Below, one piece after another: positions 18,937 to 63,329 of a stretch of 64,000 nt of DNA. The number at the start of each line of letters is the position of its first letter. The stretch's first letter is position 1. The DNA lies in IMG/VR virus record IMGVR_UViG_3300032770_000002, positions 1-64,000 of that record. One strand, given 5' to 3'. The translations under genes were made by a program, and so were the position numbers. Below the pieces are notes generated by a model that was given only the letters and a program-made list of their open reading frames with translations, was not told the origin of the DNA and did not search any database.

Positions 18937-18965
18937 GTTTACAAACGACGGATTCGTGGTATGTT
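18937..18965 (+). promoter_or_regulatory. Putative early promoter
   Basis: GTTTAC-N17-TATGTT with GTGG extended -10. Confidence 0.7.
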
Positions 18966-27779: not shown

Positions 27780-27808
27780 AATATACCACAAATCCGTGGT
27801 TTGTAAAC
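27780..27808 (-). promoter_or_regulatory. Putative early promoter
   Basis: GTTTAC-N17-TATATT with TGTGG extension. Confidence 0.75.
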
Positions 27809-32374: not shown

Positions 32375-32403
32375 AATATACTGCACTTCCTAAATTTGTA
32401 AAC
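32375..32403 (-). promoter_or_regulatory. Putative early promoter
   Basis: GTTTAC-N17-TATATT. Confidence 0.7.
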
Positions 32404-37816: not shown

Positions 37817-37846
37817 AATATACCACAAGTGCTCGAGTTTGTAAAC
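37817..37846 (-). promoter_or_regulatory. Putative early promoter
   Basis: GTTTAC-N18-TATATT with TGTGG extension. Confidence 0.72.
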
Positions 37847-45345: not shown

Positions 45346-45374
45346 ATCATACCACGAAATTGGATTTTGTAAAC
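45346..45374 (-). promoter_or_regulatory. Putative early promoter
   Basis: GTTTAC-N17-TATGAT with GTGG extension. Confidence 0.75.
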
Positions 45375-48510: not shown

Positions 48511-49063
48511 TGTCAGCGCTGACTTCGGTTATTTGGGACGACTGGTAGAAGCCGTGGATAAGCGTCCGGATAAACAAGAACTCGACATCCTGGAGAAGCC
48601 CCAGTTCGTTTGGGCGCATCGCATCAGACTCCTTTTTAGGCAACGGCCGAAACAGGAAGATGTGGTCGTAGGTTCTTGCGGTGGTCAGCGTTCGAAAGTA
48701 AAGCCACTTGAAGAAGCTCGTGTATTTTTCGAGCTGCAAGCTTGTCAACATTGACTTGTCAACGTAAAAAACGTAGTAGAAAAATGAATCGGCAAGTGAC
48801 CGGTCGGTCAGGATGATGGAATTCGGGTGTTTCTTGAGGGCGGCCTGTTCAGCGTTGAACTTCTCGCTGATGATTTCAATTTGCAGTTCAATGTATCGGA
48901 CTGGGTCCCGTCGAAGGGCGTCAATGTTGTCAATGCTAGCCCGGTCACGAATGCAGTCGCCAAGAACGACGACCCCGTTATAGTTTGTCCTTTCGGCAAT
49001 CTTTCGAATCATCGTGGACTTGCCCGAATGACACGCACCAGAAAAAGCGATCAACTTGCTCAT
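48452..49063 (-). CDS. P-loop (d)NMP kinase-like protein
   Basis: IAFSGACHSGKSTMI, ILTDRS, YDHIF; first gene of the modification operon. Confidence 0.75.
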   Translation of the reverse strand: MSKLIAFSGACHSGKSTMIRKIAERTNYNGVVVLGDCIRDRASIDNIDALRRDPVRYIELQIEIISEKFNAEQAALKKHPNSIILTDRSLADSFFYYVFYVDKSMLTSLQLEKYTSFFKWLYFRTLTTARTYDHIFLFRPLPKKESDAMRPNELGLLQDVEFLFIRTLIHGFYQSSQITEVSADNETDVNTINSIIDAYIAKG

Positions 49064-60667: not shown

Positions 60668-60699
60668 AGGCGAGGGCCTGTGGCGGCCCTCGCCTTTTT
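60668..60699 (+). terminator. Intrinsic terminator
   Basis: AGGCGAGGGCC-TGTGGC-GGCCCTCGCCT-TTTT. Confidence 0.85.
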
Positions 60700-60713
60700 A
60701 GCGTAGTTAACTT

Positions 60714-61121
60714 GTGAAAGACGACCAGTTCCTCACTTACATCATCGAGGCCGATTTAGGCGAACCGAACGTTCAGGCGTATTTCGACCGCCTGATGATG
60801 CGCCTCTTCGAATCACCGCCACTCTTGGCCTCATTTGTCAATGCAGCCACGTTCGAAGATGGTGACGACGTCGTTATCCAGTTGGAGTTCCACCAAGTTC
60901 CGCGAGAGTTCCACCAGGACTTGGCAAAGATCGCCGGTGCTCGAGACGTCCAAGTTGTTGTCTATGAAAAGGACTCGACAACTTACACTGGAATGCAGGT
61001 GAGGTTGAAGAACAACGACCTAGCTCCGAAGATGAACGTGGAGCCTGAGCACGGAGTCATGCCACTTCAACTTACCGGCGGATCAAACAACTTAGGCGGC
61101 GCCCAGGGCAGGGTCGTTTGA
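60714..61121 (+). CDS. Hypothetical protein
   Basis: GTG start after TAGTTAAC. Confidence 0.55.
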   Translation: MKDDQFLTYIIEADLGEPNVQAYFDRLMMRLFESPPLLASFVNAATFEDGDDVVIQLEFHQVPREFHQDLAKIAGARDVQVVVYEKDSTTYTGMQVRLKNNDLAPKMNVEPEHGVMPLQLTGGSNNLGGAQGRVV

Positions 61122-61334
61122 CTGGTCGGTAGCGTTTAAGTAAAGGCACCGATTTCCGAGAAAGTCTAAAATAACCTTCCGCGCAAATTGATGATGAGAC
61201 CGGATATTGACAACGCGATTCTTGGCCATTCGGTCTTCCAACAGAGCTACTTGGCTCCGTGGAATGCGAAAAGCCACAATCTCAGTGTCTTCGCTCTCGT
61301 CTACTTTGGCTCTACTGTGTCTGCTATTAGCCAT
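61092..61334 (-). CDS. Ribbon-helix-helix DNA-binding protein
   Basis: EIVAFRIPRSQVALLE...RSHHQFARKVILDFL fits the beta-alpha-alpha RHH pattern. Confidence 0.6.
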   Translation of the reverse strand: MANSRHSRAKVDESEDTEIVAFRIPRSQVALLEDRMAKNRVVNIRSHHQFARKVILDFLGNRCLYLNATDQSNDPALGAA

Positions 61335-61362
61335 GGACTACATTTAATACGATCTTTGGTCG

Positions 61363-61396
61363 TTGTAAACTGTTTTTTGTAAACTTTTTTGTAAAC
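61363..61396. repeat. Triple direct repeat TTGTAAAC (GTTTACAA on the minus strand); candidate operator
   Basis: Copies at 61363, 61377 and 61389, between the divergent RHH and portal genes. Confidence 0.7.
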
Positions 61397-61397
61397 A

Positions 61398-63329
61398 ATG
61401 AATCTTAAGTCTGTAGGGCTCCAAGTTTTCAGCACGCTCGGGATGATTGGAACGCCCGCTTCGCGTGACATGCTTATTCCACGTGCTGCGACCCCAGACG
61501 CTGAACAAGGACTGACCAAAGAGTTCCTCGAGATGGGGACCGTGGCCAATCCAGACATCTGGGCACGGTATGCCCAAGTGATGAAAGCGCCGGCAAATTA
61601 CCGGCAAATGCTTAACACGTGGGAGGAGATGTCCAGTTGGGACCTGCTTGCCGCGGTCCTCCAGGAACTTTGTGAGGAAGCCATCAATTGGGACCAGTTT
61701 AACCCAGGCCCAATCTGGTATGAGTCAAATGACCGTGAATTTACAGCTGACTTAAACCGCATGGCGAAGCGGGTCGACGTTGAGTCAATCGCATTCAGTC
61801 AAGCTCATGGAATTGCGGCGCTTGGAAATCACTTTGAGCGCATTCACTACGCCCGTGGTGAGGGCGTCCAAGGACTGTCATTCATCCCAGCTCACCAGAT
61901 TCGACGCTACTGGCTTGAACGCAATCGTCGCTGCATCGGCTTTATGTGGGACCAGCACAAGCCAGATAAGGAGAGCGTGTGGGCAGGTCCTGACAACGCG
62001 ACGCCCATTGAGCGCGTTGCGATCAACAAAAACGGCCACCTTGAGGAGCTGTGGTATCCATTCGACATCTTGCACTTTCGCCGCCTCGCCAGAAACCGAG
62101 AGACTGAACATGGTGAGCCCATCTGTGCGGAAGCCGAAGGCATCTATCGAAAGCTGCGAATGGGCCTTGACCAGATGGTCGTTCACCGGTGCCAGGTTCA
62201 GCCCGACCGATACGTCATTAACATTGACACGCAAGAGCAACCGCCGACAGAGCAGATCAAGACGGTCAATGCGTGGCGGCGGTCGATGCGTTCACGCCAG
62301 TCATTCGGCCAGGGCGGCGGGACCAACCTCAGTGACCCAACAGACTTTCGGTCATTCTACAACCCACTCGCGTTGGACACCATTCTGTGGGTGGCGAAGC
62401 CAAAAGGATTTGAGCACTCGATTACCAAACTTGGCGGAACGACACAAGTTCCTGACGTCTATGACCTCGAGCTGCTGACCGACCTATTTTTTTCGATTGT
62501 TGGCGCGCCGAAGATGTGGTTCGGCCTTGGGTCAAAAGATGGCGAGAACCCACCTTCTGGCCGAGCGTTGCTTGCGTCAGACATTCGCTCACTGCGCAAG
62601 GTTCGGTCGATTCGCCGCCCGCTTCTTGCCGGTTACCTGTGGCTTGGCTACTTCCACGCTGTGCTGCGTGGCAAGGACCCAAGGGAGTTGACGATTAACG
62701 TCAAGATGAGCGACATCGGCGGCCTCGAGGACCAGATGAAGCTCGAGCTGTTGAACTCAAAGGCCGAACTTCTCGCCTCGCTCGGCGGTGTGATGGAGCA
62801 ATATAACTTGCCAAAAGACGCTTGGATTGACTTGGTCTTTCGCCGCTACCTTCACCTCCCTGATGAGGTGGTCAACACGTTCTTGACTGCGCTGCCTTCA
62901 CCAATGCAGCCCATGGAGATGGAGTCCATCGCCAGTGGCCAGTTCAAGAACGTTTCGACGCGAGCGTTGCTTGACGCGATCGACATTCAAATTCGCAACA
63001 ACCCCAGGTGCCGCGGTCTAGTTCGTCAGATCAAACAGCTGGTTGAAGGTGAGGAGGACGGCTTGACCCCGCTTCCACGCTACGAGTCAGTCGAAGACGT
63101 CCTGTCAATGGGTCAAACCTTGAACGAGGAAGTCGTCAAGTCACCTGAAGACAGCTATCGCCTCAGCTTGATTGAACGCAACGACAACGCCGCGTCAGAC
63201 GCGAAGCGTAAAATCCACTTCCTCCAAGACTCAAAGATGACAAATGGCAACGGTTCCCAGAAGACGGTCTGGGAGTCAACGAGCTGGCGCAAGTTCATGC
63301 CGAAGCGGACCACGCAACTTCACGGATGA
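61398..63329 (+). CDS. Portal protein (T4 gp20-like)
   Basis: DILHFRR, GEPI..EA..IYRKL, PDRYVINID, YNPL...LWV, ITKLGG, GAPKMWFG. Confidence 0.88.
   Translation: MNLKSVGLQVFSTLGMIGTPASRDMLIPRAATPDAEQGLTKEFLEMGTVANPDIWARYAQVMKAPANYRQMLNTWEEMSSWDLLAAVLQELCEEAINWDQFNPGPIWYESNDREFTADLNRMAKRVDVESIAFSQAHGIAALGNHFERIHYARGEGVQGLSFIPAHQIRRYWLERNRRCIGFMWDQHKPDKESVWAGPDNATPIERVAINKNGHLEELWYPFDILHFRRLARNRETEHGEPICAEAEGIYRKLRMGLDQMVVHRCQVQPDRYVINIDTQEQPPTEQIKTVNAWRRSMRSRQSFGQGGGTNLSDPTDFRSFYNPLALDTILWVAKPKGFEHSITKLGGTTQVPDVYDLELLTDLFFSIVGAPKMWFGLGSKDGENPPSGRALLASDIRSLRKVRSIRRPLLAGYLWLGYFHAVLRGKDPRELTINVKMSDIGGLEDQMKLELLNSKAELLASLGGVMEQYNLPKDAWIDLVFRRYLHLPDEVVNTFLTALPSPMQPMEMESIASGQFKNVSTRALLDAIDIQIRNNPRCRGLVRQIKQLVEGEEDGLTPLPRYESVEDVLSMGQTLNEEVVKSPEDSYRLSLIERNDNAASDAKRKIHFLQDSKMTNGNGSQKTVWESTSWRKFMPKRTTQLHG

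What the first reader, a model, noticed from the sequence alone, without database searches (positions are those of the whole stretch)
61092..61400. RHH regulator behind a triple copy of the early-promoter -35 element
Seen: the 63-bp gap between the RHH-like gene and the portal gene holds three TTGTAAAC repeats at 14 and 12 bp spacing. The last ends 1 nt before the portal ATG, and none has a well-spaced -10. The same core (GTTTACAA) is the -35 box of the early promoters. Known: RHH proteins bind short tandem subsites and often autoregulate. Inference: this RHH binds GTTTAC boxes, autoregulates, and could shut off early promoters genome-wide.
Basis: inference. Interest (0 to 1): 0.6.

Follow-up and report, generated by a model that had tools for sequence, protein, structure and literature searches.

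The report
Three promoter boxes before RHH gene
In an uncultured 230-kb T4-like phage, a small DNA-binding-type (ribbon-helix-helix) gene next to the portal gene has an early-type promoter whose -35 box is present three times in a row, which marks a likely but unproven self-regulating switch.

Summary
TTGTAAAC stands at 61363, 61377 and 61389 in the 63-bp gap between an 80-aa gene (61092-61334, minus) and the portal gene (61398). Read on the minus strand, it is the invariant core of about 28 T4-type promoters in this 230-kb phage: TTTTTGTTTACAAA, a 16-17-nt spacer, TGnTATATT, 6 nt, then ATG.

The proximal box sits in the canonical register for the 80-aa gene. The ATG starts 36 nt after the G, and a weak -10 (TAAATG/TTAAAT) lies where TATATT belongs. 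The nearest relative has TGaTATATG at that position.

That relative keeps all three boxes base for base, while the promoter spacer is only 50% identical. Orthologues at 47-50% identity have one box, and more distant ones have none.

The protein matches no Pfam, NCBIfam or PDB sequence. It belongs to a family of at least 127 clusters, folds confidently as strand-helix-helix, and its structural neighbours are nearly all RHH proteins. The family is conserved beside T4-type portal genes.

Binding of the boxes by this protein is plausible but untested. RNA polymerase alone is the main rival. Genome-wide early shut-off is speculative.

The parts
61092..61334 (-). 80-aa gene for a ribbon-helix-helix-fold protein. 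It belongs to a new sequence family and is single copy in the phage.
   Evidence: ORF. No Pfam, NCBIfam or PDB sequence hit. The profile search found at least 127 cluster representatives. AF2 gives pLDDT 86 with extended 18-25, H26-38 and H47-59. RHH proteins dominate the fold hits. Single copy is shown.
61363..61370 (-). Proximal GTTTACAA box. This is the -35 element of the RHH gene's own promoter.
   Evidence: It sits in the same register as the canonical promoters. The ATG starts 36 nt after the G, and the modal distance in the genome is 35-37 nt. The -10 position holds TAAATG. In L007 the same position holds TGaTATATG.
61377..61384 (-). Middle GTTTACAA box, centred near -47 of the RHH promoter. 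It has no -10 of its own.
   Evidence: It is conserved in L007 with a 1-nt shift, giving spacing 13/13 instead of 14/12.
61389..61396 (-). Distal GTTTACAA box, centred near -59. It ends 1 nt before the portal ATG.
   Evidence: Its position next to the portal start is identical in L007.
61341..61347 (-). Weak -10 region of the RHH promoter: TAAATG with a 17-nt spacer, or TTAAAT with a 16-nt spacer. There is no TGn.
   Evidence: It ranks among the weakest -10 elements of the 29 promoter-like boxes.
61332..61334 (-). Start codon of the RHH gene and predicted transcription start (leaderless mRNA).
   Evidence: There are 6-7 nt between the -10 and the ATG, as at most canonical promoters. Inference; no RNA data.
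61398..63329 (+). T4-type portal gene, divergent from the RHH gene. It has no promoter motif of its own in the gap.
   Evidence: Pfam Portal_T4 at 6e-8. No class-3 motif before it. The leader RNA is unstructured, z = 0.08.
60704..60710 (+). TAGTTAA, a late-type promoter-like motif 3 nt before GTG 60714. It is the probable source of the transcript that crosses the RHH gene antisense and reaches the portal gene.
   Evidence: The motif is conserved before the orthologous gene in L007 and L006. Of ten genes behind this motif class that I scanned, only the first and fifth had informative PHROG matches: tail fibre and virion structural protein.
60682..60694 (+). Terminator-like hairpin that closes the preceding gene.
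   Evidence: No terminator-like site lies on the + strand between 61121 and 61398.
60714..61121 (+). 135-aa gene of unknown function, convergent with the RHH gene. Their 3' ends overlap by 30 bp.
   Evidence: The overlap is conserved in L004 and L006.
18937..18944 (+). Canonical early-type promoter box in the window (reference member of the class).
27801..27808 (-). Canonical early-type promoter box in the window.
32396..32403 (-). Canonical early-type promoter box in the window.
37839..37846 (-). Canonical early-type promoter box in the window.
45367..45374 (-). Canonical early-type promoter box in the window.

Best explanation
The 63-bp gap is the control region of the small RHH gene.

Shown:
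- The proximal box is the -35 element of a T4-type, host-sigma-70-style promoter. This promoter starts a leaderless mRNA at the gene's ATG and has a weak -10.
- Two further exact copies of the box lie 14 and 26 bp upstream.
- All three copies are held constant in the nearest relative.

Inferred:
- The RHH protein, made early from this promoter, binds the three boxes as dimers and represses its own promoter (negative autoregulation).
- Because it needs neighbouring subsites, it would act mainly where boxes are tandem. Those places are its own promoter and the two other tandem-box promoters at genome positions 89584/89597 and 154038/154052.
- The array abuts the portal ATG and lies in the path of the late transcript that starts at 60704. 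Occupancy of the array could therefore also delay portal expression.
For: - Promoter register of the proximal box.
- Same architecture with a better -10 in L007.
- Selection on the boxes: 24 of 24 box bases are identical to L007, against 14 of 28 in the stretch from the -35 to the ATG and about 74% overall.
- The array is the only repeat in the gap; no inverted repeat lies there.
- RHH fold: AF2 pLDDT 86, RHH proteins as nearly all top structural matches, language-model neighbours RHH_1, MetJ and Arc, and a natural two-module fusion, P0005, that fits a dimeric unit.
- Tandem boxes are enriched: 5 pairs against about 0.24 expected.
- All three tandem-box promoters are among the 7 weakest -10 elements of 29. 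By my hypergeometric arithmetic this gives about 0.01, which sets them apart as a class.
- From established knowledge, RHH regulators typically repress their own promoters through short repeated subsites (Arc, Mnt, CopG, MetJ, omega, ParG).
Against:
- Spacing is 12, 13 or 14 bp and differs between the two phages. Known cooperative RHH arrays have fixed phasing.
- The strand residues (I/V-x-F-R) are conserved across the family. Yet orthologues at 47-50% identity have one box and more distant ones none. The box is therefore not a family-wide target.
- T4 early promoters use the same GTTTAC -35 with host polymerase alone (PMC2988021), so the box needs no phage protein to function.
- A negative autoregulator usually has a strong promoter. 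This one has a poor -10.
Confidence: 0.38

Rival explanations
1. RNA polymerase only. The proximal box is the -35. The two upstream copies, with their A-tracts, act as extra docking or UP-like elements for sigma region 4 or the alpha C-terminal domains. They raise the output of a promoter with a poor -10, and the RHH protein binds somewhere else.
For: - All three tandem-box promoters have weak -10 elements: TAAATG, TAGAGT and TAAAGT.
- The spacers between boxes are A/T tracts at about -38 to -60, where UP elements act (PMC2988021 describes T4 early promoters as UP/-35/TGn/-10).
- T4 uses GTTTAC boxes with host polymerase alone.
Against: - UP function does not require exact GTTTACAA, yet both upstream copies are kept base for base in two phages while their spacers vary.
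- I know of no precedent for upstream -35 copies acting as activating elements.
- Other weak -10 promoters of the class (187704, 129788, 134161) have a single box.
Confidence: 0.22
2. Another factor binds the boxes. A different phage or host protein recognises the nearly dyad-symmetric element TTTGT-TT-ACAAA at all early-type promoters, and the array is a high-affinity site for it.
For: The conserved block is 14 bp, longer than a -35 hexamer, and 10 of its 12 central positions are dyad-symmetric.
Against: - The dyad extension is missing at the middle and proximal boxes of the array.
- No candidate protein was identified. No sigma, AsiA or second RHH was detected.
- T4 shows similarly extended early-promoter consensus without such a factor (PMC2988021).
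Confidence: 0.12
3. RNA-level role for the portal gene. Read on the + strand, the array is a U/A-rich, unstructured leader. It makes the SD-less internal portal start codon accessible on the late transcript from 60704.
For: - The leader has no significant structure (z = 0.08, centroid almost unpaired).
- The genome barely uses SD sequences: 18% of starts against 13% at random positions.
- The portal gene lacks its own promoter motif here, unlike in L006, L017, L021 and L023.
- No terminator lies upstream.
Against: Accessibility needs only A/U richness, not three exact copies of the promoter box in promoter register for the opposite gene. This role could coexist with the DNA-level role.
Confidence: 0.1
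4. Neutral product of replication slippage. A 13-bp unit was triplicated and has no function beyond the proximal -35.
For: The array is a simple tandem repeat of period 12-14. Orthologous gaps with one box exist.
Against: 24 of 24 box bases are unchanged in a phage whose adjacent non-coding DNA is 50% identical. Tandem boxes recur at two other promoters.
Confidence: 0.05

Closest known systems
RHH autorepressors with short repeated operator subsites (P22 Arc and Mnt, CopG, MetJ, omega of pSM19035, ParG)
   Same: A small strand-helix-helix protein whose gene is preceded by direct repeats overlapping its own -35. Fold support comes, which list Arc, omega, ParG, CopG-like ORF56, NikR and PutA among the matches.
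   Different: - No sequence membership in any Pfam or NCBIfam RHH family.
- The helix-helix loop is longer, and there is a conserved C-terminal YLNP.D tail.
- Subsite spacing is 12-14 bp and variable, against 7-11 bp and fixed in the known systems (my knowledge).
- The repeat is identical to the phage's general -35 box rather than a private operator.
- Binding is untested.
T4 early promoters (UP / -35 GTTTAC / TGn / -10)
   Same: The -35 core GTTTAC(A), the 17-nt spacer, the TGn-extended -10 and the A/T-rich upstream flank. T4's first 50 kb holds 8 GTTTAC-N17-19-TAnAnT sites on the early strand and 0 with TTGACA. The class is described in PMC2988021.
   Different: - Here the ATG follows the -10 by about 6 nt, giving leaderless mRNAs, and the genome lacks SD sequences.
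- The RHH promoter has no TGn and a poor -10.
- I know of no triplication of the -35 box in T4.
Aca-type feedback repressors of strong early viral promoters (bacterial Aca1/Aca2; archaeal Aca8)
   Same: The regulator gene is itself preceded by the regulatory sequence shared by the early promoters, and early transcription is later repressed (PMC11065993).
   Different: - The Aca proteins are HTH or wHTH proteins that bind inverted repeats.
- No anti-defence genes have been identified here.
- Repression is not shown.

Membership tests
Ribbon-helix-helix (MetJ/Arc) superfamily | N-terminal strand followed by two helices (beta-alpha-alpha) of about 45 residues | tested here: met
   AF2 with 62 sequences gives mean pLDDT 86, with extended 18-25, H26-38 and H47-59. 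In the VIA wide search, nearly all of the top 50 chains are RHH proteins at Z 2.6-4.2, rmsd about 2-3 A over 43-50 residues. The Foldseek top hits are CopA_SO, PutA RHH and Arc, though with weak E-values.
Ribbon-helix-helix (MetJ/Arc) superfamily | Sequence match to a curated RHH family (RHH_1, Arc, MetJ, CopG and so on) | tested here: not met
   No Pfam hit at E <= 1. None of the 62 family members matches an RHH model except one NikA-like hit at 0.022. There is no NCBIfam hit and no PDB sequence hit.
Ribbon-helix-helix (MetJ/Arc) superfamily | Intertwined homodimer with a two-stranded antiparallel ribbon | not testable with these tools
The indirect evidence is a natural 158-aa protein with two tandem modules, P0005.
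Ribbon-helix-helix (MetJ/Arc) superfamily | Sequence-specific DNA binding through the ribbon | not testable with these tools
   F22, R23, S46, R52 and K53 are nearly invariant, which is compatible with DNA contact, but there is no assay.
RHH autoregulatory operator array (omega / MetJ / ParG type) | Two or more repeated subsites overlapping the regulator's own promoter | tested here: met
   Three exact 8-mers. The proximal one is the -35.
RHH autoregulatory operator array (omega / MetJ / ParG type) | Fixed subsite spacing that keeps neighbouring dimers in phase | tested here: not met
   Spacing is 14 and 12 bp here, 13 and 13 in L007, and 13 and 14 at the two other tandem promoters.
RHH autoregulatory operator array (omega / MetJ / ParG type) | Repeat conserved next to orthologous regulators | tested here: inconclusive
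   - Triple in L007 (78% identity).
- One box in L004, L005, L006 and L018, with a degenerate second TTTAC 14 bp upstream in L006.
- One box plus a 17-bp palindrome in L008.
- None in L010, L021, L022 or L023.
T4-type early promoter | GTTTAC(A) at -35, a 16-17-nt spacer, and an A/T-rich upstream flank | tested here: met
   for the class, for the RHH promoter, and the T4 comparison.
T4-type early promoter | TGn-extended, near-consensus -10 | tested here: not met
   The RHH promoter has TAAATG/TTAAAT without TG. The feature is met in L007, which has TGaTATATG.
T4-type early promoter | Recognised by unmodified host sigma-70 polymerase immediately after infection | not testable with these tools

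The most novel reading that the evidence does not exclude
The portal-adjacent RHH protein recognises the -35 box itself (GTTTACAA, embedded in the near-dyad TTTGT-TT-ACAAA). Once it has accumulated from its own triple-box promoter, it competes with sigma region 4 at all of the roughly 28 early promoters. That would be a one-protein, genome-wide shut-off of early transcription in a T4-like jumbo phage, and it would also gate read-through into the portal gene.
Probability: 0.12. Interest if true: 0.75.

Novelty: new variant of a known kind. Interest (0 to 1): 0.45.

Why it matters
How T4-type phages switch off their very strong early promoters is still not fully explained. According to PMC2988021, shut-off persists without AsiA or ModA. 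A small repressor whose operator is the early -35 box would be a simple answer for this phage lineage.

Independently of that idea, the work defines three things:
- A new sequence family with an RHH-type fold (at least 127 clusters) that is conserved beside T4-type portal genes.
- A compact divergent control region.
- A phage whose three promoter-like motif classes all sit in leaderless register. That makes it a useful model for SD-independent expression.

If the RNA-polymerase-only rival is right, tandem -35 copies would be an unusual way to strengthen a weak promoter.

Tried and rejected
1. Sequence-family assignment failed. There were no hits in Pfam, PHROGs (only one weak family of unknown function), NCBIfam or PDB sequences.
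2. The word-based homologue search found only one relative. I therefore used the single large profile search, because both the word search and the family scans had left the protein open.
3. The monomer fold from 4 sequences was poor (pLDDT 57). It became confident with 62 sequences.
No verdict.
6. I looked for a portal-direction promoter inside the gap. No sigma-70-like pair was found. There is no exact late-type or GTTCT motif, only CATTTAA 50 nt upstream, and that is not conserved in L007.
7. GTTCT/AGAAC inverted repeats before RHH orthologues (L010, L017, L022) first looked like a family operator. In L022 and at several places in this genome, the two arms are the position-locked GTTCT elements of two divergent genes. 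I therefore treat them as promoter elements, not operators.
8. Relatives of the two genes behind the other tandem-box promoters: none in IMG/VR.
9. A pattern scan for triple GTTTACAA arrays in IMG/VR gave 40 loci. All are unrelated AT-rich phages or giant-virus bins with generic tandem repeats.
10. P0004, which matched the profile with 32 stretches, is a translated tandem DNA repeat and not a relative.
11. No cultured relative exists. The best portal identity in GenBank phages is 24% or less.

Full report
**What is there**

The window is the first 64 kb of a 230,253-bp IMG/VR virus record. The record has direct terminal repeats, is rated 100% complete, and has 54% G+C.

At 61092-61334 on the minus strand lies an 80-aa ORF. 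At 61398-63329 on the plus strand lies a T4-type portal gene (Pfam Portal_T4, 6e-8), followed by a gp25-like baseplate gene.

The 63-bp gap between them holds TTGTAAAC at 61363, 61377 and 61389, with spacing of 14 and 12 bp. The last copy ends 1 nt before the portal ATG. The 8-mer occurs 10 times in the window against 1.47 expected.

**The box belongs to a promoter class**

Read on the opposite strand, the 8-mer is GTTTACAA. The genome holds 39 copies. 28 of them lie in a nearly invariant 14-bp block, TTTTTGTTTACAAA. A 16-17-nt spacer, TGnTATATT and, most often, 6 nt follow before an ATG.

This is the architecture of T4 early promoters. The first 50 kb of T4 holds 8 GTTTAC-N17-19-TAnAnT sites on the early strand and none with TTGACA. 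Hinton's review describes T4 early promoters as UP/-35/TGn/-10 promoters read by host polymerase (PMC2988021).

That these promoters are "early" in this phage is therefore an inference by analogy.

**The proximal box is the -35 of the small gene's promoter**

All three copies point towards the 80-aa gene. The ATG of that gene starts 36 nt after the G of the proximal box. The modal distance in the genome is 35-37 nt.

The -10 position holds TAAATG, or TTAAAT with a spacer one base shorter, and has no TG.

The nearest relative is a 1-kb Logan contig, L007, whose protein is 78% identical. There the same position reads TGaTATATG, and the ATG is again at +36.

Orthologues at 47-50% identity (L004, L005, L006, L018) have one box, TGn, AAGAGT or CAGAGT, and the ATG at +36.

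**Are the two extra copies functional?**

Three observations suggest they are.
- L007 keeps three exact boxes, with spacing 13/13. Between the two phages 24 of 24 box bases are identical. The 28 nt from the -35 to the ATG are 14/28 identical, and the whole 328-column alignment is about 74% identical. The boxes are therefore under selection, while the spacers between them are not.
- Same-strand box pairs at 12-14 bp are far more frequent than chance: 5 pairs against about 0.24 expected. They occur at two other promoters, 89584/89597 and 154038/154052.
- All three tandem-box promoters are among the 7 weakest -10 elements of 29 (about 0.01 by hypergeometric arithmetic).

More distant orthologous loci have no such box. 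L010, L021, L022 and L023 carry another position-locked element, GTTCT, before the gene.

**The protein**

No curated family matches it, and no PDB sequence matches. A profile search of 1.84 billion representatives found at least 127 clusters, mostly of 65-90 aa. Their conserved pattern is (I/V)xFR ... S..Q.ARK.V.DFL.GRL.YLNP.D.

With 62 sequences AlphaFold2 gives pLDDT 86. The model has an extended segment at 18-25 and helices at 26-38 and 47-59.

The structure search that does not depend on Foldseek lists almost only RHH proteins. They include DinJ, NikR, RelB, CopA_SO, ORF56, ParG, PutA, omega, Arc and AmrZ, at Z 2.6-4.2. Foldseek and the language-model atlas point the same way. The Z-scores are low, as expected for a 45-residue half of an obligate dimer. 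It is the composition of the list that carries the argument.

A natural protein with two tandem modules, P0005, fits a dimeric unit. The dimer itself could not be modelled.

I file the protein as RHH-fold, not as a member of any named RHH family.

**Context**

The family gene lies divergent from, or one to two genes away from, a T4-type portal gene in every locus with enough sequence. These are the window, L007, L004-6/18, L008, L010, L017 (with an HNH/AP2 gene inserted), L021, L022, L023 and the contig of P0016.

In the window a late-type motif, TAGTTAA at 60704, precedes the 135-aa gene at 60714-61121. It follows a terminator-like hairpin. The motif is conserved before the orthologous gene in L007 and L006.

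No terminator-like site and no promoter motif lies between that gene and the portal gene. The portal gene is therefore probably read from 60704, antisense through the RHH gene and across the box array.

In L006, L017, L021 and L023 the portal gene has its own late-type motif 4-6 nt before the ATG. In the window and in L007 the box array occupies that place. As RNA, the array is unstructured.

**Interpretation**

Shown:
- A canonical-register promoter for the RHH gene.
- Two extra, selected copies of its -35 box.
- An RHH-type fold.
- Conserved synteny with the portal gene.

Inferred:
- The protein binds the boxes and represses its own promoter. I give this 0.38.
- It is the only repeat in the gap, and RHH regulators commonly autoregulate through such repeats.

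Against this reading:
- The spacing is variable.
- The ribbon residues are conserved across relatives that lack the box.
- The same box needs only host polymerase in T4.

The main rival (0.22) is that the extra boxes and their A-tracts help polymerase at a weak promoter. Lesser rivals are another box-binding factor, an RNA-level role for portal translation, and neutral slippage. Genome-wide early shut-off remains possible (0.12) but has no direct support.

**Limits**

There are no expression data, no binding data, no host and no cultured relative. Gene starts outside the region come from a crude ORF picker. The class sizes of the motifs are therefore lower bounds.

Noticed in passing
whole genome G000; in the window e.g. 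3907 (+), 43271 (-), 49076 (-): GTTCT stands exactly 7 nt before the ATG of 18 ORFs. Other distances give 0-6 cases, and control pentamers are flat. This is a second, position-locked promoter-like class in the same register as a -10 hexamer, with no visible -35. It also precedes the RHH orthologues in L010, L021 and L022.
   Followed up: partly
whole genome; in the window 60704, 31233 (-), 53632 (-), 55249, 56356 (-): TA[TG]TTA[AG] occurs 31 times, and 18 of those sites lie within 12 nt of a start codon. Of ten genes behind this motif class that I scanned, only two had informative PHROG matches, and both are virion proteins (tail fibre, virion structural protein). It is probably the late promoter, analogous to T4 TATAAATA, and it is conserved before orthologous genes in L007, L006, L017, L021 and L023.
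   Followed up: partly
whole genome: All three motif classes put the start codon 3-8 nt behind the element, and SD-like words are barely enriched (18% of starts against 13% at random positions). The phage seems to rely on leaderless or SD-independent translation. The host is unknown, and the related contigs come from peat or soil metagenomes.
   Followed up: partly
G000:C1:89584-89604 and 154038-154059 (outside the window): Two more promoters with two same-strand boxes 13-14 bp apart and weak -10 elements (TAGAGT, TAAAGT). They precede a 310-aa phrog_1250 protein and a 172-aa protein of unknown function.
   Followed up: partly
G000:C1:193277/193297 and 97757/97796 (outside the window): Back-to-back divergent early-type boxes 20 and 39 bp apart. 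At 193277/193297 both sides have good -10 elements. At 97757/97796 only the 97796 promoter has a canonical -10.
   Followed up: no
window 48742-48763 (-): GTTGACAA occurs twice, 14 bp apart, inside the coding region of a 203-aa P-loop-like gene. It contains the perfect TTGACA hexamer but has no -10 behind it. It may be an internal regulatory site or chance.
   Followed up: no
window 61092-61121: The RHH gene and the convergent 135-aa gene overlap by 30 bp at their 3' ends. The overlap (43 bp) is conserved in L004 and L006, which implies antisense transcription between an early and a late gene.
   Followed up: partly
L017:about 1000-1480: An HNH/AP2-type homing-endonuclease-like ORF is inserted between the RHH orthologue and the portal gene in one relative.
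   Followed up: no
L008:161-177: In a relative with 36% protein identity, the spacer between TTTACA and TAAAGT of the RHH gene's promoter is a perfect 17-bp palindrome (arms ATTCAAAA / TTTTGAAT). It is a classical operator candidate and differs from the box array.
   Followed up: no
P0005: A 158-aa metagenomic protein consists of two tandem copies of the RHH-family module, a natural single-chain dimer.
   Followed up: no
L064, L048, L039 and others: Unrelated AT-rich phage contigs carry three to many tandem GTTTACAA-containing repeats, some directly upstream of sigma-70-like promoters. They are probably independent iteron or operator arrays.
   Followed up: no
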